A stretch of 64,000 bases of DNA from Haliotis cracherodii (lineage: Eukaryota), in contig NW_027266280.1 of the NCBI RefSeq assembly GCF_022045235.1, positions 2,108,001 to 2,172,000 of the forward strand, in the 5' to 3' direction. Position 1 is the first letter of the stretch, and each line of letters begins with the position of its first letter. This document shows, in pieces, positions 35,380 to 51,882 of the stretch. Under the pieces are notes generated by a model. That model worked only from the letters and a program-made list of their open reading frames with translations, had not been told where the DNA came from and searched no databases. A program made the translations under genes and the position numbers.

Positions 35380-38300
35380 TAATGTTATCAAGCCAAATAC
35401 CAATGTTATCAAGCTATACACATTGTCAGTACAAGTCTGATACCAATGTTATCAAGCTATACACATTGTCAGTACAAGTCTGATACCAATGTTATCAAGC
35501 TATACACATTGTCAGTACAAGTCTGATACCAATGTAATCAAGCTATACACATTGTCAGTACAAGTCTGATACCAATGTTATCAAGCTATACACATTGTCA
35601 GTACAAGTCTGATACCAATGTTATCAAGCTATACACATTGTCAGTACAAGTCTGATACCAATGTTATCAGGCTATACAGATTGTCAGTACAAGTCTGATA
35701 CCAATGTTATCAAGCTATACACATTGTCAGTACAAGTCTGATACCAATGTTATCAAGCTATACACATTGTCAGTACAAGTCTGATACCAATGTTATCAAG
35801 CTATACACATTGTCAGTACAAGTCTGATACCAATGTTATCAGGCTAAACACAGTGTCAGCACAAGTCTGATACCAATGTTATCAGGCTATACACATTGTC
35901 AGTACAAGTCTGATACCAATGTTATCAGGCTAAACACATTGTCAGTACAAGTCTGATACCAATGTTATCAGGCTAAACACATTGTCAGTACAAGTCTGAT
36001 ACCAATGTTATCAAGCTATACACATTGTCAGTACAAGTCTGATACCAATGTTATCAGGCTATACACATTGTCAGTACAAGTCTGATACCAATGTTATCAA
36101 GCTATACACATTGTCAGTACAAGTCTGATACCAATGTTATCAAGCTATACACATTGTCAGTACAAGTCTGATACCAATGTTATCAAGCTATACACACTGT
36201 CAGTACAAGTCTGATACCAATGTTATCAAGCTATACACATTGTCAGTACAAGTCTGATACCAATGTTATCAGGCTATACACATTGTCAGTACAAGTCTGA
36301 TACCAATGTTATCAAGCTATACACATTGTCAGTACAAGTCTGATACCAATGTTATCAAGCTATACACATTGTCAGTACAAGTCTGATACCAATGTTATCA
36401 AGCTATATACACATTGTCAGTACAAGTCTGATACCAATGTTATCAAGCTATATACACATTGTCAGTACAAGTCTGATACCAATGTTATCAAGCTATATAC
36501 ACATTGTCAGTACAAGTCTGATACCAATGTTATCAGGCTATACACATTGTCAGTACAAGTCTGATACCAATGTTATCAAGCTATACACATTGTCAGTACA
36601 AGTCTGATACCAATGTTATCAAGCTGTACACATTGTCAGTACAAGTCTGATACCAATGTTATCAAGCTGTACACATTGTCAGTACAAGTCTGATACCAAT
36701 GTTATCAAGCTATACAGATTGTCAGTACAAGTCTGATACCAATGTTATCAAGCTATACACATTGTCAGTACAAGTCTGATACCAATGTCATCAAGCTATA
36801 CACATTGTCAGTACAAGTCTGATACCAATGTTATCAAGCTATACACATTGTCAGTACAAGTCTGATACCAATGTTATCAAGCTATACAGATTGTCAGTAC
36901 AAGTCTGATACCAATGTTATCAAGCTAAACACATTGTCAGTACAAGTCTGATACCAATGTTATCAAGCTATATGCACATTGTCAGTACAAGTCTGATACC
37001 AATGTTATCAAGCTGTACACATTGTCAGTACAAGTCTGATACCAATGTTATCAAGCTATATACACATTGTCAGTACAAGTCTGATACCAATGTTATAAAG
37101 CTATACAGATTGTCAGTACAAGTCTGATACCAATGTTATCAAGCTATACACATTGTCAGTACAAGTCTGATACCAATGTTATCAAGCTATATACACATTG
37201 TCAGTACAAGTCTGATACCAATGTTATCAGGCTAAACACATTGTCAGTACAAGTCTGATACCAATGTTATCAGGCTAAACACATTGTCAGTACAAGTCTG
37301 ATACCAATGTTATCAGGCTAAACACATTGTCAGTACAAGTCTGATACCAATGTTATCAAGCTATATACACATTGTCAGTACAAGTCTGATACCAATGTTA
37401 TCAAGCTATACACATTGTCAGTACAAGTCTGATACCAATGTTATCAAGCTATACAGATTGTCAGTACAAGTCTGATACCAATGTTATCAAGCTATACAGA
37501 TTGTCAGTACAAGTCTGATACCAATGTTATCAAGCTGTACACATTGTCAGTACAAGTCTGATACCAATGTTATCAAGCTGTACACATTGTCAGTACAAGT
37601 CTGATACCAATGTTATCAAGCTATACACATTGTCAGTACAAGTCTGATACCAATGTTATCAAGCTATACACATTGTCAGTACAAGTCTGATACCAATGTT
37701 ATCAAGCTATACACATTGTCAGTACAAGTCTGATACCAATGTTATCAAGCTATAAACATTGTCAGTACAAGTCTGATACCAATGTTATCAAGCTATACAC
37801 ATTGTCAGTACAAGTCTGATACCAATGTTATCAAGCTATAAACATTGTCAGTACAAGTCTGATACCAATGTTATCAAGCTATACACATTGTCAGTACAAG
37901 TCTGATACCAATGTTATCAAGCTATACACATTGTCAGTACAAGTCTGATACCAATGTTATCAAGCTATACACATTGTCAGTACAAGTCTGATACCAATGT
38001 TATCAAGCTATACAGATTGTCAGTACAAGTCTGATACCAATGTTATCAAGCTATACACATTGTCAGTACAAGTCTGATACCAATGTTATCAAGCTATACA
38101 CATTGTCAGTACAAGTCTGATACCAATGTTATCAAGCTATACACATTGTCAGTACAAGTCTGATACCAATGTTATCAAGCTATACACATTGTCAGTACAA
38201 GTCTGATACCAATGTTATCAAGCTATACACATTGTCAGTACAAGTCTGATACCAATGTTATAAAGCTATACACATTGTCAGTACAAGTCTGATACCAATG

Positions 38301-39195
38301 TTATCAAGCTATACACATTGTCAGTACAAGTCTGATACCAATGTTATCAAGCTATACACATTGTCAGTACAAGTCTGATACCAATGTTATCAAGCTATAA
38401 ACATTGTCAGTACAAGTCTGATACCAATGTTATCAAGCTATACACATTGTCAGTACAAGTCTGATACCAATGTTATCAAGCTATACACATTGTCAGTACA
38501 AGTCTGATACCAATGTTATCAAGCTATACACATTGTCAGTACAAGTCTGATACCAATGTTATCAAGCTATACAGATTGTCAGTACAAGTCTGATACCAAT
38601 GTTATCAAGCTATACACATTGTCAGTACAAGTCTGATACCAATGTTATCAAGCTATACACATTGTCAGTACAAGTCTGATACCAATGTTATCAAGCTATA
38701 CACATTGTCAGTACAAGTCTGATACCAATGTTATCAAGCTATACACATTGTCAGTACAAGTCTGATACCAATGTTATCAAGCTATACACATTGTCAGTAC
38801 AAGTCTGATACCAATGTTATCAAGCTATACACATTGTCAGTACAAGTCTGATACCAATGTTATCAAGCTATACACATTGTCAGTACAAGTCTGATACCAA
38901 TGTTATCAAGCTGTACACATTGTCAGTACAAGTCTGATACCAATGTTATCAAGCTATACACATTGTCAGTACAAGTCTGATACCAATGTTATCAAGCTAT
39001 ACACATTGTCAGTACAAGTCTGATACCAATGTTATCAAGCTATATACACATTGTCAGTACAAGTCTGATACCAATGTTATCAAGCTATACACACTGTCAG
39101 TACAAGTCTGATACCAATGTTATCAAGCTATACACATTGTCAGTACAAGTCTGATACCAATGTTATCAAGCTATACACATTGTCAGTACAATGTC
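35380..39195. repeat. 43-bp satellite, ~88 copies
   Basis: Unit AAGTCTGATACCAATGTTATCAAGCTATACACATTGTCAGTAC. Confidence 0.97.
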
Positions 39196-42383: not shown

Positions 42384-42732
42384 GGGACTGAACTTAGAGG
42401 GGACTGAACTTAGAGGGGACTGAACTCCAGGGGACTGAACTCTGGGGGACTGAACTTAGGGGGGACTGAATTTAGGGGGGACTGAACTCCGAGGGACTGA
42501 ACTCTGGGGGACTGAATTTAGGGGACTGAATTTTGGGGGGACTGAATTTAGGGGGGAATGAATTTAGGGGGACTGAATTTAGGGGGGACTGAATTTAGGG
42601 GGGACTGAATTTAGGGGGGACTGAACTTTGGGGGACTGAAATTTGGGGGACTGAACTCTGGGGGACTGAACTCTGGGGGACTGAACTCTGGGGGACTGAA
42701 CTCTGGGGGACTGAACTCAGAGGACTGAACTA
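42384..42732. repeat. 14-15-bp G-rich minisatellite
   Basis: GGGGGACTGAA(C/T)T(C/T)N repeated ~23 times. Confidence 0.92.
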
Positions 42733-42755
42733 GGGAGTGTGGGGGGGGGACTTAC

Positions 42756-42983
42756 CGCCATACACTTCCTGCTGATACAGGACTGCTTCATCCTGCCAGG
42801 GCCACCGAACTTGCGCATGTCTTTACAGAAGTTGCATTCCCCGCAGTCGGACCTCGTACATGCCTCGCACTTCTTGCACCTTGTGCGTCGCCGCCGGTTT
42901 CCAGACGCCACTTTGTTCGCTGTGCTGCCTTTTGGTGTCTTCCCTCCTACGTACGTCGTCGTTGTCTTCAGCTTCTTCACTTT
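42756..42983 (-). CDS. KDM2: KDM2 exon 11 (CXXC zinc finger)
   Basis: [45 protein letters not shown] with KFGG motif. Confidence 0.96.
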
Positions 42984-43084
42984 CTGGGGAGCAGGGAAAC
43001 AAAGAAGGAGTGAAAGAATGAATGATTGTCACAACCAAAACATCAGTTCCATATAATAACAACAACAATAACCAACAACAACAA

Positions 43085-44784: not shown

Positions 44785-47420
44785 TTCTAGAACCCACAAT
44801 CGTAGGCTTCTAGAACCCACAATCATAGGTTTCTAGAACCCTCAATCATAGGTTTCTAGAACCCACAATCATAGGTTTCTAGAACCCACAATCATAGGCT
44901 TCCAGAACCCACAATCATAGGCTTCCAGAACCCACAATCATAGGCTTCTAGAACCCACAATCATAGGTTTCTAGAACCCACAATCATAGGTTTCTAGAAC
45001 CCACAATCATAGGCTTCTAGAACCCACAATCATAGGCTTCTAGAACCCACAATCATAGGTTTCTAGAACCCACAATCATAGGCTTCCAGAACCCACAATC
45101 ATAGGCTTCTAGAACCCACAATCATAGGCTTCTAGAACCCACAATCATAGGTTTCTAGAACCCACAATCATAGGCTTCTAGAACCCACAATCATAGGTTT
45201 CTAGAACCCACAATCATAGGCTTCTAGAACCCACAATCATAGGTTTCTAGAACCCACAATCATAGGCTTCTAGAACCCACAATCATAGGTTTCTAGAACC
45301 CACAATCACAGATTTCTAGAACCCACAATCATAGGCTTCTAGAACCCACAATCATAGGTTTCTAGAACCCACAATCATAGGCTTCTAGAACCCACAATCA
45401 TAGGTTTCTAGAACCCACAATCATAGGCTTCTAGAACCCACAATCATAGGTTTCTAGAACCCACAATCACAGATTTCTAGAACCCACAATCATAGGCTTC
45501 TAGAACCCACAATCATAGGTTTCTAGAACCCACAATCATAGGCTTCTAGAACCCACAATCATAGGCTTCTAGAACCCACAATCACAGATTTCTAGAACCC
45601 ACAATCATAGGCTTCTAGAACCCACAATCATAGGCTTCTTGAACCCACAATCATAGGCTTCCAGAACCCACAATCACAGATTTCTAGAACCCACAATCAT
45701 AGGTTTCCAGAACCCACAATCATAGGCTTCTAGAACCCACAATCATAGGCTTCCAGAACCCACAATCACAGATTTCTAGAACCCACAATCATAGGCTTCT
45801 AGAACCCACAATCATAGGCTTCTAGAACCCACAATCATAGGTTTCTAGAACCCACAATCACAGATTTCTAGAACCCACAATCATAGGCTTCTAGAACCCA
45901 CAATCATAGGTTTCTAGAACCCACAATCATAGGCTTCTAGAACCCACAATCATAGGCTTCTAGAACCCACAATCACAGATTTCTAGAACCCACAATCATA
46001 GGCTTCTAGAACCCACAATCATAGGCTTCTAGAACCCACAATCATAGGCTTCCAGAACCCACAATCACAGATTTCTAGAACCCACAATCATAGGTTTCCA
46101 GAACCCACAATCATAGGCTTCTAGAACCCACAATCATAGGCTTCCAGAACCCACAATCACAGATTTCTAGAACCCACAATCATAGGCTTCTAGAACCCAC
46201 AATCATAGGCTTCTAGAACCCACAATCATAGGCTTCTTGAACCCACAATCATAGATAGGCTTCTAGAACCCACAATCATAGGCTTCTAGAACCAACAATC
46301 ATAGAAAGGCTTCTAGAACCCACAATCATAGGTTTCTAGCACCCACAATCATGTTTCTAGAAACCCACAATCAGAGGTTTCTAGAACCCACAATCATTGG
46401 TTTCTAGAACCCACAATCATAGGTTTCTAGAACCCACAATCATAGGCTTCAAGAACCCACAATCATAGGTTTCCAGAACCCACAATCATAGATTTCTAGA
46501 ACCACAATCATAGGTTTCTAGAACCCACAATCAAAGGCTTTAGAACCCACAATCATAGGCTTCTAGAACCCACAATCATAGGTTTCCAGAACCCACAATC
46601 ATAGGTTTCTAGCACCCACAATCATAGTTTTCTAGAACCCACAATCATAGGTTTCTAGAACCCTCAATCATAGGTTTCAAGAACCCACAATCATAGATTT
46701 CAAGCACCCACAATCATAGGCTTCTAGAACCCACAATCATAGGTTTCTAGAACCCTCAATCATAGGTTTCTAGAACCCACAATCATAGATTTCAAGCACC
46801 CACAATCATAGGCTTCTAGAACCCACAATCATAGGTTTCTAGAACCCTCAATCATAGGTTTCTAGAACCCACAATCATAGGTTTCTAGAACCCACAATCA
46901 TAGGTTTCAAGCACCCACAATCATAGGCTTCTAGAACCAGCAATCATAGGCTTCTAGAACCCACAATCATAGGCTTCTAGAACCCACAATCATAGGCTTC
47001 TAGAACCAGCAATCATAGGCTTCTAGAACCCACAATCATACTCATAGGCTTCTAGAACCCATAATCACAGCTTTCTAGAACCCACAATCATAGGCTTCTA
47101 GAACCCACAATCATAGACTTCAAGAACCCACAATCATAGACTTCTAGAACCCACAATCATAGGCTTCAAGAACCCACAATCATAGATTTCAAGCACCCAC
47201 AATCATAGGCTTCTAGAACCCACAATCATAGGCTTCAAGAACCAACAATCATACGCTTCTAGAACCCACAATCATAGGCTTCTTGAACCCACAATCATAG
47301 GCTTCTAGAACCCACAATCATAGGCTTCTTGAACCCACAATCATAGGCTTCTAGAACCCACAATCATAGGTTTCTAGAACCCACAATCATAGGTTTCTAG
47401 AACCCACAATCATAGCCTTC
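44785..47420. repeat. 23-bp minisatellite, ~114 copies, inside a SINE family 3 remnant
   Basis: Unit TAGAACCCACAATCATAGG(C/T)TTC. Confidence 0.96.
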
Positions 47421-47521
47421 TAGTACATCAAAGGGACACAACTCTTCAAAGCAAACTGCGCCGCCTTCAACAACGAGGCAACTCGTTCCTGCCAAAAACA
47501 GCCCCAAGTTTCATATCTCAC

Positions 47522-48115
47522 CCTAACATCCCTTATCACCGCGTCGGGATCCAGGAGATCTTTGGGAACCCCCCGTTTGTTAAGTGGTAAGTTCTCCACC
47601 TTCTCCACCAGCTTGGCAAGTCCGTCCAACTCATACTTGGTCAAATGTATCCACCGCCTCCCACCATCACTACTTCTCTTGTCCATGTCACCATTTTCAG
47701 CAAAACCATTTTCAGAATGCACCGAGTCCGTTGATAATTTCCGAACTGATCTTGAATTCCTCAACGATTCGTCATCACTTTGTGATTTCTTGATCCCAGA
47801 ATCATCAATTCTAGTAAGCGGGATGGTGATGCTCTTTGACAGCTTCTGTTCTTCATCCTTCTCCAGCTTGATCTTTGAAAAGTCCACCGGTGAATGTTCC
47901 TCTGGGTTCCGGGATGGCGGTCGGGAGTCGGGGTTCCGGGAAGGTGGCCGGGAATCATCGCTGGTGAAGAAGGATCCCGGAGACTCTGGCTGCTCATCGA
48001 GGTCGATCTTCTCGGGTTTTTTCAGGTACGATTTCTTGCCCACACATTCCACGTAGCGAGTCAACACGTACCACATGATCTCGTTGTAAAATGGATATCG
48101 GAATTTCTGTGGAAC
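47522..48115 (-). CDS. KDM2: KDM2 exon 9
   Basis: VPQKFRYPFYNEIMWYVLTRY...IHLTKYELDGLAKLVEKVENLPLNKRGVPKDLLDPDAVIRDVR; 594 nt, phase 0/0. Confidence 0.92.
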
Positions 48116-48324
48116 CTGATAGGGGAAAACATATCATGATTAAAGCATCATTAACGGGGTTGGTGATAATCTTGACATATATTTCTACGGGGTTCACGTG
48201 CTGACATATTTACAGGAAAATAGGTAGGTGGGGGTGGGGGGTGGGTGGGTGAGGGGGTGGTGGTGAGGGTGGGAAGCAATTAAAATTTTGTTTTTGATTT
48301 GTGCCACTACAGGTGAGCTGGTAT

Positions 48325-48900
48325 AAAACAAGAGTCATCAGAAAGATGACATATCCCCCCGGCAGCTGTCTGTAAAGTAACCACTAGTAAATGTGCAATT
48401 CTCTATGTAATGAGTCAACAGTTGAATGTTCTTTAAGAAGCATACATTGTTTACCCACTGAATGGTTTTCGAATTCTGGCCCGGAAACGAACCCGTTCCC
48501 CAATGGAGTCTAGGTCCAACTTCTTTCCATAAAAATTGTAAAAAATAAAGATTCGTAATTTTTTTTTATCAAAATGCACCACTGCAGTATGTTTCTGATA
48601 GATTTGCCAAGTTTCGATCAAATACACTGAATGGTTTTGGAATTCTACCCCGGAAACAAACCCCATCCCTAATTGAGTCTATGTCCAACTTCATTCCATA
48701 AAAATTTAAAAAAAAAAAAATTAGAAAAATCCCAAAATATCAATTGGCACCACTTCAGTATGTGCCTGATAGATTTGCCAAGTTTCGATCAAAAACACTG
48801 AATGGTTTTGGAATTCTGCCCCGGAAACGAACCCCATCCCCAATTGAGTCTATGTCCAACTTCATTCCATAAAACTTTATATGCCGGGGGGGGTAAAAAA
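48325..48900. mobile_element. Helentron/HINE-like element
   Basis: AACAAGAG start, inverted CCCCCCGGCA/TGCCGGGGGG, internal ~175-bp repeats. Confidence 0.6.
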
Positions 48901-49087
48901 GGTATAATGTGAGACGAGATTCTGCATGCTCCATACACCAAGGAGGCAGTCTCACCTAGCTTTAATCTTTAAACTTAATGACTAAAAAAAATGGCATTGA
49001 CATAATCCATGTACATGTTTCTATCAAATCAGCTTAATTATTCAAACACCAATACTCATCTATAAAATTGATAAAATTTGTGATTTA

Positions 49088-49264
<177 letters not shown>

Positions 49265-50526
49265 TTAGGAAAAGCAGGTAAGTTGTTTGTTTGTTGTTTA
49301 ACACCACACTCAGCAATATTCCAGCTACAGGACAGGAAACTATGTCAAGTACATGAAGTGACCCGGTCAGTAACAGTGTTATACCATGTTTTTTTGTTTT
49401 GTTTGTTTTTTGGTTAACGCTGCACTCAGCAATATTCCAGCTATATGACGGCAGTCTGTAAATAATTAAGTCTGTGCCAGACAATCCAGTGATTAACATC
49501 ATTAGCATCAATCCATAAATACTAGTCGTGAAAATATCAACTGGTTATGCTAACGGCATAACAACCCCCATTTTCAGGTCAAAGTCAAAGTTGTTGCAGT
49601 TGAAATTAAAGATAAACCACTAGACCTATCTATATATGTGCCAAGTTTGGTGAAGAAGTATTGTGCAGTTTTCACGATCTGCTCTGGAAACGAGACAATC
49701 ATCATTTTCAGTCTGAGTCATAAGTTATTGCCATGGAAACTCGAAAAATAGATTTTTTAAAAATCCCAAATTATCAAAAAGCACCAGTTCACCACTTGAC
49801 CTATAATGTGCCAAGTTTGGATAAAAATACAGTACAGGATTCCTGATGTTCACAAAATGTGTCTGACAGTGGCCGTGACGTCTCATAGACTAGGGTAAGA
49901 GTAGCTTCCCTTTGACAAAGGGCAGTTACTCTAGCAGACAGACCGATGGATTGCCGTGAAAGGCAATTAAAAACAATAAATATTGTTGTTTTGCGTATAT
50001 GTTGCTTCGCCACTAGATAAGAAACAGATTTCAGTTGGAACTATATTGGCTACTGTCACTGTCCGACTGACACATCACTTACCCTATTACGTAATAAATA
50101 TTAATGCGCGCATTCCAGGAAAACTCGCAAAGTTTCGGTAATGTTTGTGAGAGAGAGAAAGCGATTTTGAAGCACAGAATTAAAGAATGACATTATATGA
50201 TAAAGAGGTTATCAAGCTTGTGTGTTTGGGGATGGTAAATATCCTGTATTAGTAATAAACACTATGTATTTAGCTCGCCAAACACACTCGCGTGGGTACA
50301 GGCTACATATTCTGCCTCCAGATGAACAACTTGGCTTTTATGCCACTTTTAGAATATTCCGCTATAAAGTACACCACAAACAGGCTTCACACATTGTACC
50401 CATTTTGGGAATCAAACCTGGTCCTATGGGGTGATGAGCAAACCCTTCAACCACCAGGCTACCCCACCGCACCTCACAGGGAGACAAGATTCCAACACAC
50501 ACCATGACCCCAACATATTCTCTGAC

Positions 50527-50774
50527 CTGAAGGAATGATGAATGTATCGCCGGCCTGGAGATGGATCTTCTGACATTCCGACACCTGGTCCGGGAGAAAT
50601 ATGTCCCCTTGTTTGGCGGACAGCACCCAGTTTTCGTACAGCTCCACGTTAGCCTCTGTCGGGGGGATGAGCCAGAATATCTTCTCTCCATGGAGGATGT
50701 GGTACCACACCGAGGTGCCGCCGAAGTCGATGTGGAAGTCCGTGTAGCACCCCGCCACACTCATCAAGCAGTAC
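50527..50774 (-). CDS. KDM2: KDM2 exon 7 (JmjC core, HxD iron ligands)
   Basis: [39 protein letters not shown]...TFIIPS(G); ends phase 1. Confidence 0.96.
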
Positions 50775-51144
50775 CTGTGGGAGGTGACAAGAGTGAGTGA
50801 GTGAGTGAGTGAGTGAGTGAGTGAGTGAGTGAGTGAGTGGGTGAGTTGGTGAGAGTGAGCGGGCAAGAGAGAGAGAGATAGAGAGCGAATTGGGTTTATT
50901 GCTGATTTGAACAATATTTCAGTTATATGATGGCGTTGATTCGGGATGCAAGTTGTGACGTTTACCAAATAGGGTGAAACACTTGAGCATGGGTATGGTG
51001 CTGACAAACCTTGAAACATAATCAAAGTGAACCAAAACCTACGACTCAAACCTACGATCATAGCAGCGTGCAACTTTTCATATTTTTTAATTCATCCTCT
51101 TACTTGGAGAGACCCACAGAATAGAAAATGAAAAGAAGACACTA

Positions 51145-51660
51145 TAAGTTGTAGCAGGATCACTCACGGGAACATGGGGTTGTATGCGCTATGCGTCTTG
51201 CCTCCGGATCGAGGTATAAAACCTAACACAGGAAGCATATAACCCCCGTGTGCCCCTCATGATCCTGCTGCAATGAATTTATCTCACCTACATGTTTAAA
51301 TGTGACATTGTAAAAGAATTAACAAAAATTCAAAATTGATAGAAAACAACTTGTGCTATGTCACGTGACTTCCAGTGACTCAGAAAAAGTGTGTAGCGTT
51401 TTGCTTTTGCTTTGAAGTGGGGTATAAGGGATTCATTCTGCCTCTCAGGTCTATGTGCAGCCTGTATTGCTCATGGCGGGGTATAAGGGATTCATTCTGC
51501 CTCTCAGATCTATGTCCAGCCTGTATTGCTCATAGCGGGGTATAAGAGATTTATTCCCTCACTGAGAAATTAAGTACCCTCCAAGGTGGGTTACACAGTA
51601 TTTTATCAAGATCACATGGACCAACAGATCTCATGATTCTGACATGGAGGTGAGATAAAG
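51145..51660. mobile_element. MITE-like repeat (copy of 440-812)
   Basis: Direct sequence similarity. Confidence 0.7.
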
Positions 51661-51775
51661 CATTTTTATTTGTTTTGTCATCATCAACCCCAATAATGGT
51701 TTTAACCCTTTGAATACAGAATGCATGGACCTTATCATTGCTTATGGAGACTGAGTATGCTGTGATGGGTCTTAC

Positions 51776-51882
51776 TTCTGAACTTTAGGGTACTTCATCT
51801 TCTCTATGATGTTGGTAGATTCTGTCTGGCAGTCCTTGAGATGTCTCGGCCACACTCGGTCCACCCAGTCGACCTGCCTCAC
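51776..51882 (-). CDS. KDM2: KDM2 exon 6 (JmjC)
   Basis: [36 protein letters not shown]. Confidence 0.95.

What the first reader, a model, noticed from the sequence alone, without database searches (positions are those of the whole stretch)
49335..49384. Inverted 50-nt copy of the KDM2 exon-2 donor placed next to the exon-8 acceptor: possible RNA bridge removing the JmjC core in frame
Seen: 49335-49384 is the reverse complement (47/50) of 58233-58282, which spans the exon-2 3' end and donor. It includes exon-only bases (GGAAAC) that are absent from the array units. It lies in intron 7, 113 nt upstream of the exon-8 acceptor, between two SINE-2 tails. Exon 2 and exon 7 both end in phase 1, and exons 3-7 total 654 nt (218 codons). 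Inference: in pre-mRNA it can pair with the real donor (masking it) or with any of ~30 intron-2 array units, looping out exons 3-7. That would give an in-frame exon2-exon8 mRNA lacking the HxD iron ligands but keeping CXXC/PHD/F-box/LRR, and/or a 654-nt circRNA. Known: mammalian KDM2A/B make JmjC-less short isoforms from internal promoters, so this would be a different route. It may also be a neutral templated insertion.
Basis: partly seen in the sequence, partly recalled or inferred. Interest (0 to 1): 0.8.

Follow-up and report, generated by a model that had tools for sequence, protein, structure and literature searches.

The report
Inverted splice-donor copy in KDM2 intron
Intron 7 of an abalone KDM2 histone-demethylase gene holds a real, unique, backwards copy of the gene's own exon-2 splice donor. 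Together with a neighbouring SINE it makes introns 2 and 7 complementary, an arrangement known to promote circular RNAs, but the main mRNA is spliced normally and no JmjC-less isoform was seen.

Summary
It also matches each of the 30 units of the 44-nt donor-spanning array at 86-92%. In the 1.18-Gb genome this sequence occurs only at this locus. Exon coordinates, phases and the 654-nt sum for exons 3-7 are all correct.

The 'exon-only GGAAAC' is real, but only 3 of its bases tell exon from unit, and they could come from SINE A or its target-site duplication.

The element abuts a SINE tail, just as the far end of the array does. The result is a collinear 177-nt inverted repeat between intron 7 and intron 2. 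These are the only inverted repeats in this 14.5 kb of pre-mRNA.

Spliced contigs from two abalone species show only the canonical e6-e7-e8-e9 joins. A published RNase-R data set from Pacific abalone lists a low-count KDM2 circRNA. It ends exactly at a 248-nt exon (the length of exon 7) and starts where exon 3 is expected.

Best reading: a templated inverted insertion that now forms part of an ordinary circRNA-promoting intronic repeat. The in-frame exon2-exon8 mRNA is untested. Presence in congeners could not be checked. The scan noted donor arrays elsewhere in this genome, but no inverted copy.

The parts
49335..49389 (+). The element. It reads on the + strand like the sense sequence of the KDM2 exon-2 end, donor and first 24 intron bases. 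In the - strand pre-mRNA it is therefore antisense to the donor and to every array unit.
   Evidence: 55 nt, 93% to 58228-58282 and 86-92% to 30 units. Unique to this locus in the genome.
58228..58282 (-). Source region: the last 31 nt of exon 2 (58282-58252), the donor G|GTCAGT, and the first 24 nt of intron 2.
   Evidence: The exon-2 peptide aligns to human KDM2A residues 17-59 including this end, so the exon is ancestral and the copies are derived.
56956..58278 (-). 44-nt donor-spanning ('mirage') minisatellite, 30 units. Each carries a donor-like G|GTCAGT followed by an in-frame TAA.
   Evidence: Each unit pairs with the element at -60 to -77 kcal/mol.
49283..49327 (-). SINE A: tail plus the last ~32 nt of a SINE, 5'-truncated, antisense to nothing in the same intron. 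It is also present in organisms B and C.
   Evidence: Contigs of other SINE copies diverge from the window at 49327 (table 7). DNA contigs of B and C run from unique intron sequence into it, ending at 49307 and 49312 (table 8).
49390..49520 (-). SINE B: T/G-rich tail (49390-49416) plus ~105 nt of SINE 3' body, 5'-truncated. With the element it forms the intron-7 arm of the inverted repeat.
56690..56956 (+). SINE C, oriented opposite to SINE B. Its tail abuts the last array unit. 56838-57004 is the intron-2 arm of the collinear 177-nt inverted repeat.
   Evidence: (49339-49515 vs 56838-57004, 82.5%).
56351..56688 (-). 42-nt array, a diverged (~73%) relative of the 44-nt unit, on the other side of SINE C. 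ACTAT flanks SINE C on both sides, which suggests the SINE landed inside an older array.
59375..59514 (+). SINE D in intron 1, a second inverted partner of SINE A and SINE B. Pairing here would bracket exons 2-7.
   Evidence: (140 nt at 80.7%; 47 nt at 95.7%).
50527..50774 (-). Exon 7 (248 nt): JmjC core with the H-x-D iron ligands. Its donor at 50527 is the predicted back-splice donor.
   Evidence: PF02373; KDM2A 199-280, E=2e-41.
56057..56135 (-). Exon 3 (79 nt). Its acceptor at 56135 is the predicted back-splice acceptor.
49106..49221 (-). Exon 8 (116 nt), encoding the third iron-ligand histidine region. Its acceptor lies 113 nt downstream of the element in the RNA.
   Evidence: KDM2A 282-318. 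Spliced contigs join it to exons 7 and 9.

Best explanation
The element is a one-off inverted copy, by templated insertion, of the exon-2/intron-2 boundary or of an early array unit beside it. It sits among SINE insertion debris in intron 7.

In the pre-mRNA, the element and the abutting SINE B form the downstream arm of an intronic inverted repeat. The upstream arm is in intron 2: 30 array units, the true donor, and SINE C. Pairing of the two arms brings the exon-7 donor close to the exon-3 acceptor and favours back-splicing of exons 3-7 into a 654-nt circRNA. I expect this to be a low-level and probably non-adaptive side product. The bulk of the transcripts is spliced canonically.

Shown: the copy, its uniqueness, the direction exon to copy, the inverted-repeat map, the duplex energies, and canonical e6-e9 splicing.
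From the literature: a circRNA with fitting boundaries in a congener.
Inferred: that the pairing forms in vivo, that it causes the circRNA, and how the copy arose.
For: - Copy and uniqueness.
- Exon is ancestral.
- All 33 inverted matches in 47.0-61.5 kb involve 49282-49515, and 31 of them pair with intron 2 or the exon-2 end. None lies within a single intron to compete.
- Duplex energies: element with donor -85 kcal/mol; element with units -60 to -77; SINE C with SINE B -158; composite arms -221.
- The element is not locked in a local fold (z = -0.24).
- Inverted repeats of 30-40 nt suffice for circularisation in reporter genes (PMC4201285).
- PMC11764893 Table S1: novel_circ_0000955 in the KDM2B-like gene of H. 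discus hannai. It ends at the 3' end of a 248-nt exon and contains a 173-nt exon (the lengths of exons 7 and 5 here). It starts 351 nt before the end of the exon that corresponds to exon 4, against 339 nt here from the exon-3 start. It has 3+2 junction reads after RNase R.
- Of 13 minisatellites in the window, only this one has a solo copy outside its array. That fits a single accidental event.
Against: - No back-splice or skip junction was seen in this species. Only assembled contigs could be laid, and they drop rare forms.
- The published circRNA has 5 reads in 2 of 6 libraries, from one caller (find_circ), in another species whose intron 7 I could not inspect. Exon identity there rests on lengths and annotation, and the start is 12 nt off.
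- The SINE B / SINE C pair alone could do the job, so the 55-nt element may contribute nothing.
- Intron 2 may be removed before intron 7 is transcribed, about 9 kb later.
Confidence: 0.5

Rival explanations
1. Neutral filler DNA with no measurable effect on RNA processing. The copy arose by template switching or repair at a SINE insertion site and simply persists. Any KDM2 circRNA arises independently of it.
For: - It is wedged between a 5'-truncated SINE and another SINE's tail.
- It is about 7% diverged from its source, similar to SINE B's ~9% from the family consensus.
- None of its 4 differences is mirrored in any array unit, so there is no sign of co-variation.
- Only canonical joins appear in spliced contigs of two species.
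Against: The architecture is exactly the one known to promote back-splicing, with no competing intra-intron repeats. A circRNA with fitting ends is on record in a congener.
Confidence: 0.3
2. One reading: a selected RNA bridge or donor mask. Pairing with the true exon-2 donor or with the decoy units loops out exons 3-7 and yields an in-frame exon2-exon8 mRNA. The protein would lack the H-x-D ligands but keep the CXXC domain and the downstream domains.
For: - The frame is preserved.
- The strongest single duplex is with the authentic donor (-85 kcal/mol), and it extends 4 nt into exon-only sequence.
- Exon-skipping lariats are one accepted route to multi-exon circRNAs (my background knowledge), so the congener circRNA is compatible with this reading.
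Against: - No such contig or loose end appears at 49221 in the listed output for two species.
- The product would retain KDM2A-equivalent residues 282 onward, i.e. an incomplete cupin barrel. I infer it would probably misfold.
- The informative exon-only bases number only 3 and have other possible sources.
- The donor is transcribed about 9 kb before its mask.
Confidence: 0.07
3. An editing-complementary or dsRNA-forming sequence. The 31 exonic bases of exon 2 stay able to pair with the element (-47.5 kcal/mol) until intron 7 is removed. That would make a substrate for ADAR recoding of the exon-2 end, or for small-RNA production from the element/array duplex.
For: Duplex energies. Exon plus distant intronic complement is the classical ADAR site layout (my background knowledge).
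Against: No RNA/DNA comparison over exon 2 was possible. No A>G differences were listed in the element, but depth there is swamped by SINE copies.
Confidence: 0.05
4. Assembly artefact: the inverted 55-mer is a mis-join in a repeat-rich intron.
For: Independent DNA contigs break in the flanking SINEs, so none of the listed pieces crosses the element (table 8).
Against: The element carries 4 private differences from every possible template, which a chimeric read or mis-join would not create. The flanks are ordinary SINE fragments, and SINE A is confirmed at the same place in two other species.
Confidence: 0.02

Closest known systems
Intronic complementary sequences flanking circularised exons (inverted Alu/SINE pairs; short-repeat reporters of Liang & Wilusz 2014, PMC4201285)
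   Same: Reverse-complementary arms lie in the introns upstream and downstream of a block of exons. The arms are well above the 30-40 nt that suffices in reporters. No competing repeats lie inside either intron. A fitting back-spliced product is reported in a congener.
   Different: One part of the arm is not a transposon but a copy of the gene's own exon-2 donor. Its partner is a 30-copy array, giving 31 alternative registers, one of which covers the authentic 5' splice site. Dependence of the circRNA on the repeat is untested.
Long-range pre-mRNA base pairings that regulate splicing by looping out exons (PMC8052449; Drosophila cases in PMC2724269)
   Same: Complementary boxes several kb apart bracket exons whose removal keeps the reading frame.
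   Different: Those cases are defined by evolutionary conservation or compensatory change and by an observed alternative isoform. Neither is available here.
'Mirage' minisatellites: tandem duplications of exon-intron boundaries (amphioxus Adh3 and globins, PMC3087553)
   Same: The 44-nt array is a textbook example: the unit is 32 nt of exon end plus 12 nt of intron including the donor. The element is a stray unit-like copy of it.
   Different: As that paper describes them, mirages are tandem and direct. A solitary inverted copy 9 kb away in another intron is not part of that description, and none of the other 12 arrays in this window has one.
JmjC-less short isoforms of mammalian KDM2A/KDM2B
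   Same: The outcome would be a KDM2 protein without demethylase activity that keeps the CXXC domain.
   Different: The route differs (exon skipping rather than an alternative promoter), and so does the product, which would keep the C-terminal part of the JmjC fold. No such isoform was observed here.

Membership tests
circRNA-promoting intronic inverted repeat | Reverse-complementary sequences in the two introns that flank the circularised exons | tested here: met
   49339-49515 (intron 7) vs 56838-57004 (intron 2), 177 nt at 82.5%, plus 29 further element-unit matches. The pair flanks exons 3-7.
circRNA-promoting intronic inverted repeat | Arms long and stable enough to pair (at least ~30-40 nt) and not out-competed by repeats within one intron | tested here: met
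   -77 to -85 kcal/mol for the element alone and -221 for the composite arms; no intra-intron inverted repeats in 47.0-61.5 kb. Threshold taken from PMC4201285.
circRNA-promoting intronic inverted repeat | A back-spliced RNA joining the downstream donor to the upstream acceptor | tested here: inconclusive
   Not observable in this species, because only contigs could be laid on a stretch that lacked exon 3. In H. discus hannai, novel_circ_0000955 fits the exon-7 donor exactly and the exon-3 acceptor to within 12 nt, with 5 reads.
circRNA-promoting intronic inverted repeat | Circularisation depends on the repeats (deletion or mutation test) | not testable with these tools
   Needs a minigene or genome edit.
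Regulatory long-range RNA bridge (exon looping-out) | The alternative isoform that lacks the bracketed exons exists | tested here: inconclusive
   contigs of organisms A and C show only e9-e8-e7(-e6). No loose end at 49221 appears among the listed rows, but contigs drop rare forms and 2534 rows were not shown.
Regulatory long-range RNA bridge (exon looping-out) | Conservation or compensatory substitutions of the paired boxes across species | not testable with these tools
DNA contigs of congeners break in the flanking SINEs. Within the locus, none of the element's 4 differences is matched in any unit.
'Mirage' exon-boundary minisatellite (for the partner array) | The tandem repeat unit spans an exon-intron boundary, and the first copy is the functional exon end | tested here: met
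   unit 1 is 58278-58235 and contains the exon-2 end and donor. One search shows the exon end is conserved coding sequence. Which copy is used as the donor was not tested here.
KDM2 (JHDM1) histone demethylase gene | JmjC domain with the H-x-D...H ligands, followed by a CXXC zinc finger; best match to KDM2A among solved structures | tested here: met
   (PF02373 in exon 7, PF02008 at 42720-43028). (exons 2, 7, 8 match KDM2A 17-59, 199-280, 282-318, with E down to 2e-41). PHD, F-box and LRR were not tested.
ADAR editing-complementary sequence | A-to-G differences between RNA and the same individual's DNA inside the duplex | not tested
   The single read-laying run was used on 47430-51890 with contigs. 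Exon 2 was outside the stretch.

The most novel reading that the evidence does not exclude
The element is a maintained riboregulator built from the gene's own splice site. As an antisense copy of the exon-2 donor, it could pair either with the authentic donor or with any of 30 decoy donors, and so set the balance between catalytic KDM2 mRNA, an in-frame JmjC-less exon2-exon8 mRNA, and an exon 3-7 circRNA. This would be a different route to the catalytic / non-catalytic KDM2 switch that mammals achieve with internal promoters.
Probability: 0.06. Interest if true: 0.75.

Novelty: new member of a known kind. Interest (0 to 1): 0.4.

Why it matters
If the pairing works as predicted, this is a clean natural example of how a random templated insertion plus a donor-spanning minisatellite can create circRNA-promoting architecture from a gene's own splice site. 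It has a built-in multi-register partner and gives a simple deletion test. It also gives a concrete, checkable candidate cause for a KDM2 circRNA already listed in an abalone data set. If the pairing does nothing, it is a useful caution: striking self-complementarity around catalytic exons can be SINE-era debris. Either way, no new kind of mechanism is implied.

Tried and rejected
1. Genome-wide repeat family. Rejected: the 64-nt query hits only this element and the array in 1.18 Gb.
2. SINE B plus element as a recent segmental copy of SINE C plus the array end. Neither supported nor excluded. B-C identity (80.7%) equals what two independent copies would show, with a single shared CpG-to-TpG change. 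The junction phase and the collinearity remain suggestive.
3. A SINE target-site preference for ATACCATG that would explain the shared junction phase. Rejected: 103 genomic matches against 44 for a control 8-mer, many from another repeat.
4. A target-site duplication around the whole SINE A-element-SINE B block. None was convincing. The only candidate is a weak one for SINE A alone: GCAGGTAAG at 49274-49282 against ACAGGAAAC at 49332-49340, sharing 6 of the 8 bases of CAGGTAAG / CAGGAAAC. It could account for the 'exon-only' GGA.
5. Presence of the element in congeners through DNA contigs. Unresolved: contigs stop in the SINEs at 49307/49312 and restart at 49628/49635.
7. Known RNA family or strong local structure in intron 7: none.
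8. Solo copies of the other 12 minisatellites in the window: none.
9. A joined exon2-exon8 or fully spliced model was deliberately not built, searched or folded. Exons were analysed one by one.

Full report
OBSERVATION. On the + strand, 49335-49389 reads GGAAACTATGTCAAG...TTATACCATGT. The - strand at 58282-58228 reads the same with four differences. A search of the window's whole 1.18-Gb assembly with 49335-49398 returned only the element itself, the exon-2 copy (E=1.2e-14) and the array units. The sequence is therefore not a dispersed repeat, and the match is far beyond chance.

GENE MODEL. The gene lies on the - strand. GT-AG boundaries give:
- e2 58390-58252
- e3 56135-56057
- e4 55843-55797
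- e5 55027-54855
- e6 51882-51776
- e7 50774-50527
- e8 49221-49106
- e9 48115-47522

Exons 2 and 7 both end after the first base of a codon, and exons 3-7 total 654 nt. An e2-e8 join would read ...CCC G|GC TGG... in frame. The element ends 113 nt upstream of the exon-8 acceptor.

The exons were searched one by one. Exon 7 hits Pfam JmjC, and a downstream ORF hits zf-CXXC. Exons 2, 7 and 8 align to human KDM2A residues 17-59, 199-280 and 282-318. Because the exon-2 end is conserved coding sequence, the direction of copying is exon to array and element, not the reverse. I did not build or search any joined exon model.

THE PARTNER. 56956-58278 is a 44-nt minisatellite of 30 units at 96% identity. 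Its first unit is the exon-2 end plus donor. This kind of array has been described in amphioxus as a 'mirage' (PMC3087553). Earlier notes of this scan report more of them in this genome (s1-834572, s1-845432, s1-823192, s1-834554). Those notes also name the genome as black abalone, which I did not verify independently. A 42-nt array at 56351-56688 is a ~73% relative of the same unit. SINE C (56690-56956) lies between the two arrays with ACTAT on both sides, so it probably inserted into an older array.

NEIGHBOURHOOD AND ORIGIN. On the + strand the order is:
- unique intron sequence;
- SINE A (tail plus ~32 nt, 49283-49327, 5'-truncated);
- seven uncertain bases;
- the element;
- SINE B (tail at 49390, about 130 nt, 5'-truncated);
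- another repeat.

Both SINEs have the orientation opposite to SINE C (intron 2) and SINE D (intron 1).

BLAST joins the element and SINE B into one collinear 177-nt inverted match with the last array unit plus SINE C (49339-49515 vs 56838-57004, 82.5%). In both places the unit is cut at the same phase (TTATAC, 5 nt, then the SINE tail). This suggests that the element and SINE B were copied together from a unit-plus-SINE-C arrangement. Two routes would give that result: an inverted DNA duplication, or reverse-transcriptase template switching onto a SINE C read-through transcript, which would be antisense to KDM2 and so give the observed orientation.

The SINE sequences cannot confirm this. B and C are 80.7% alike, exactly what two independent copies (83% and 94% to consensus) would give, and they share one CpG-to-TpG change. 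A target-site preference that could explain the shared phase was not found.

The 'exon-only' GGAAAC is truly absent from all units. However, only 3 of its 6 bases distinguish exon from unit. They overlap a possible continuation of SINE A and a possible SINE A target-site duplication (contigs of other SINE copies diverge at 49327).

Two of the element's four differences coincide with the state of the 42-nt units (my rough estimate is p about 0.04). This hints that it was copied from an older unit type, before the present 44-nt array was homogenised. Of 13 minisatellites in the window, only this one has a copy outside its array. I conclude that it is a single accidental templated insertion of SINE-era age. 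The exact mechanism is inferred, not shown.

PAIRING POTENTIAL. As RNA, the element pairs as follows:
- with the authentic donor region: -85 kcal/mol (shuffles -18 +/- 4);
- with the 30 units: -60 to -77 kcal/mol;
- with the 31 exonic bases alone: -47.5 kcal/mol.

The SINE C / SINE B pair gives -158 kcal/mol and the composite arms -221. Every inverted repeat detectable in 47.0-61.5 kb has one arm in 49282-49515. There are 31 partners in intron 2 or the exon-2 end, 2 in intron 1, and none inside a single intron. The element is not held in a strong local fold (z = -0.24), and no Rfam family matches intron 7.

This is the standard architecture for repeat-driven back-splicing. Inverted repeats of 30-40 nt suffice in reporter genes (PMC4201285), and long-range pairings are associated with exon skipping and back-splicing (PMC8052449).

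EXPRESSION EVIDENCE. Runs of four coded organisms hold the stretch. A 1,274-nt contig of organism A joins e9-e8-e7. A 1,580-nt contig of organism C joins e9-e8-e7-e6 and runs 585 nt further upstream. These contigs skip the introns exactly, so they come from RNA, and canonical splicing is the main form. Among the rows shown, none links exon 8 to anything else, but contigs drop rare variants and most rows were not shown.

DNA contigs of organisms B and C enter SINE A from the unique side and stop at 49307 and 49312. SINE A is therefore shared by three species. The element itself could not be resolved.

LITERATURE. Table S1 of a Pacific-abalone circRNA study (RNase R treatment, find_circ; PMC11764893) lists novel_circ_0000955, chr10:51585100-51589715(+), in a KDM2B-like gene. 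Its end coincides with the 3' end of an annotated 248-nt exon, and it contains an annotated 173-nt exon. These are exactly the lengths of exons 7 and 5 here. Its start lies 351 nt before the end of the exon that precedes the 173-nt exon's intron. Here the exon-3 start is 339 nt before the exon-4 end. This fits an exon 3-7 circle. The support is thin (3+2 junction reads in 2 of 6 libraries), the species is different, and I could not see its introns.

MECHANISM, COMMITTED. Most likely (about 0.5), the element together with SINE B is the intron-7 arm of an inverted repeat that promotes low-level exon 3-7 circularisation as a by-product. Next (about 0.3), it is inert debris. It is frame-compatible and could be the linear partner of a lariat-derived circle. 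It is unobserved, though, and would keep KDM2A-equivalent residues from 282 on, an incomplete cupin barrel that I infer would fold poorly. An editing or small-RNA role (about 0.05) and an assembly artefact (about 0.02) complete the list.

NOVELTY. This is a new member of a known kind, intronic complementary sequences around circularised exons. Its unusual twist is that one arm derives from the gene's own 5' splice site and its partner is a 30-register mirage array.

LIMITS.
- There were no raw RNA reads.
- The joined exon2-exon8 model was left out on purpose.

Noticed in passing
window 51899-54830 (intron 5) and 51870-51900: The 25/50-nt minisatellite that fills almost all of intron 5 is built from copies of the exon-6 acceptor region. 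The true site reads GTGTGTCGCTACAG|GTGAGG; the units read ...GTGTGTCGCTACATGTGTGG / ...TTACTACATGTGTGG. So it is an acceptor-side 'mirage' in which AG has become AT in nearly all copies. At least one of the 19 near-matches to the acceptor motif, at about 54543, keeps CAG|G.
   Followed up: partly
window 56351-56956: SINE C separates the 44-nt donor array from a diverged (~73%) 42-nt array of the same origin, with ACTAT on both flanks. This implies an older array that was split by the SINE and then homogenised separately on each side.
   Followed up: partly
window 50775-50846: The pyrimidine tract in front of the exon-7 acceptor is a (CTCA)n microsatellite, (GAGT)14 on the + strand. It has the same motif as the tail of the second SINE family in the window, so a repeat tail may be serving as the polypyrimidine tract.
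   Followed up: no
window 59470-59514 and 49381-49398: SINE D (intron 1) and SINE B are both preceded by the same 9-mer, ATACCATGT, just outside their tails. A genome-wide count showed no general preference for this motif, so the coincidence is unexplained.
   Followed up: yes
window, whole: There are thirteen minisatellites with period of at least 15 and at least 5 copies in 64 kb, several of them inside KDM2 introns (23-nt at 44785-47423, 44-nt at 55120-55613, 43-nt at 35397-39191). That is an unusually high density.
   Followed up: no
PMC11764893 Table S1, rows such as novel_circ_0000104-0000107: The published abalone circRNA table contains runs of entries shifted by 5 nt with identical lengths. 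These look like tandem-repeat mapping artefacts, so low-count entries in that table need re-checking, including the KDM2 entry used here.
   Followed up: no
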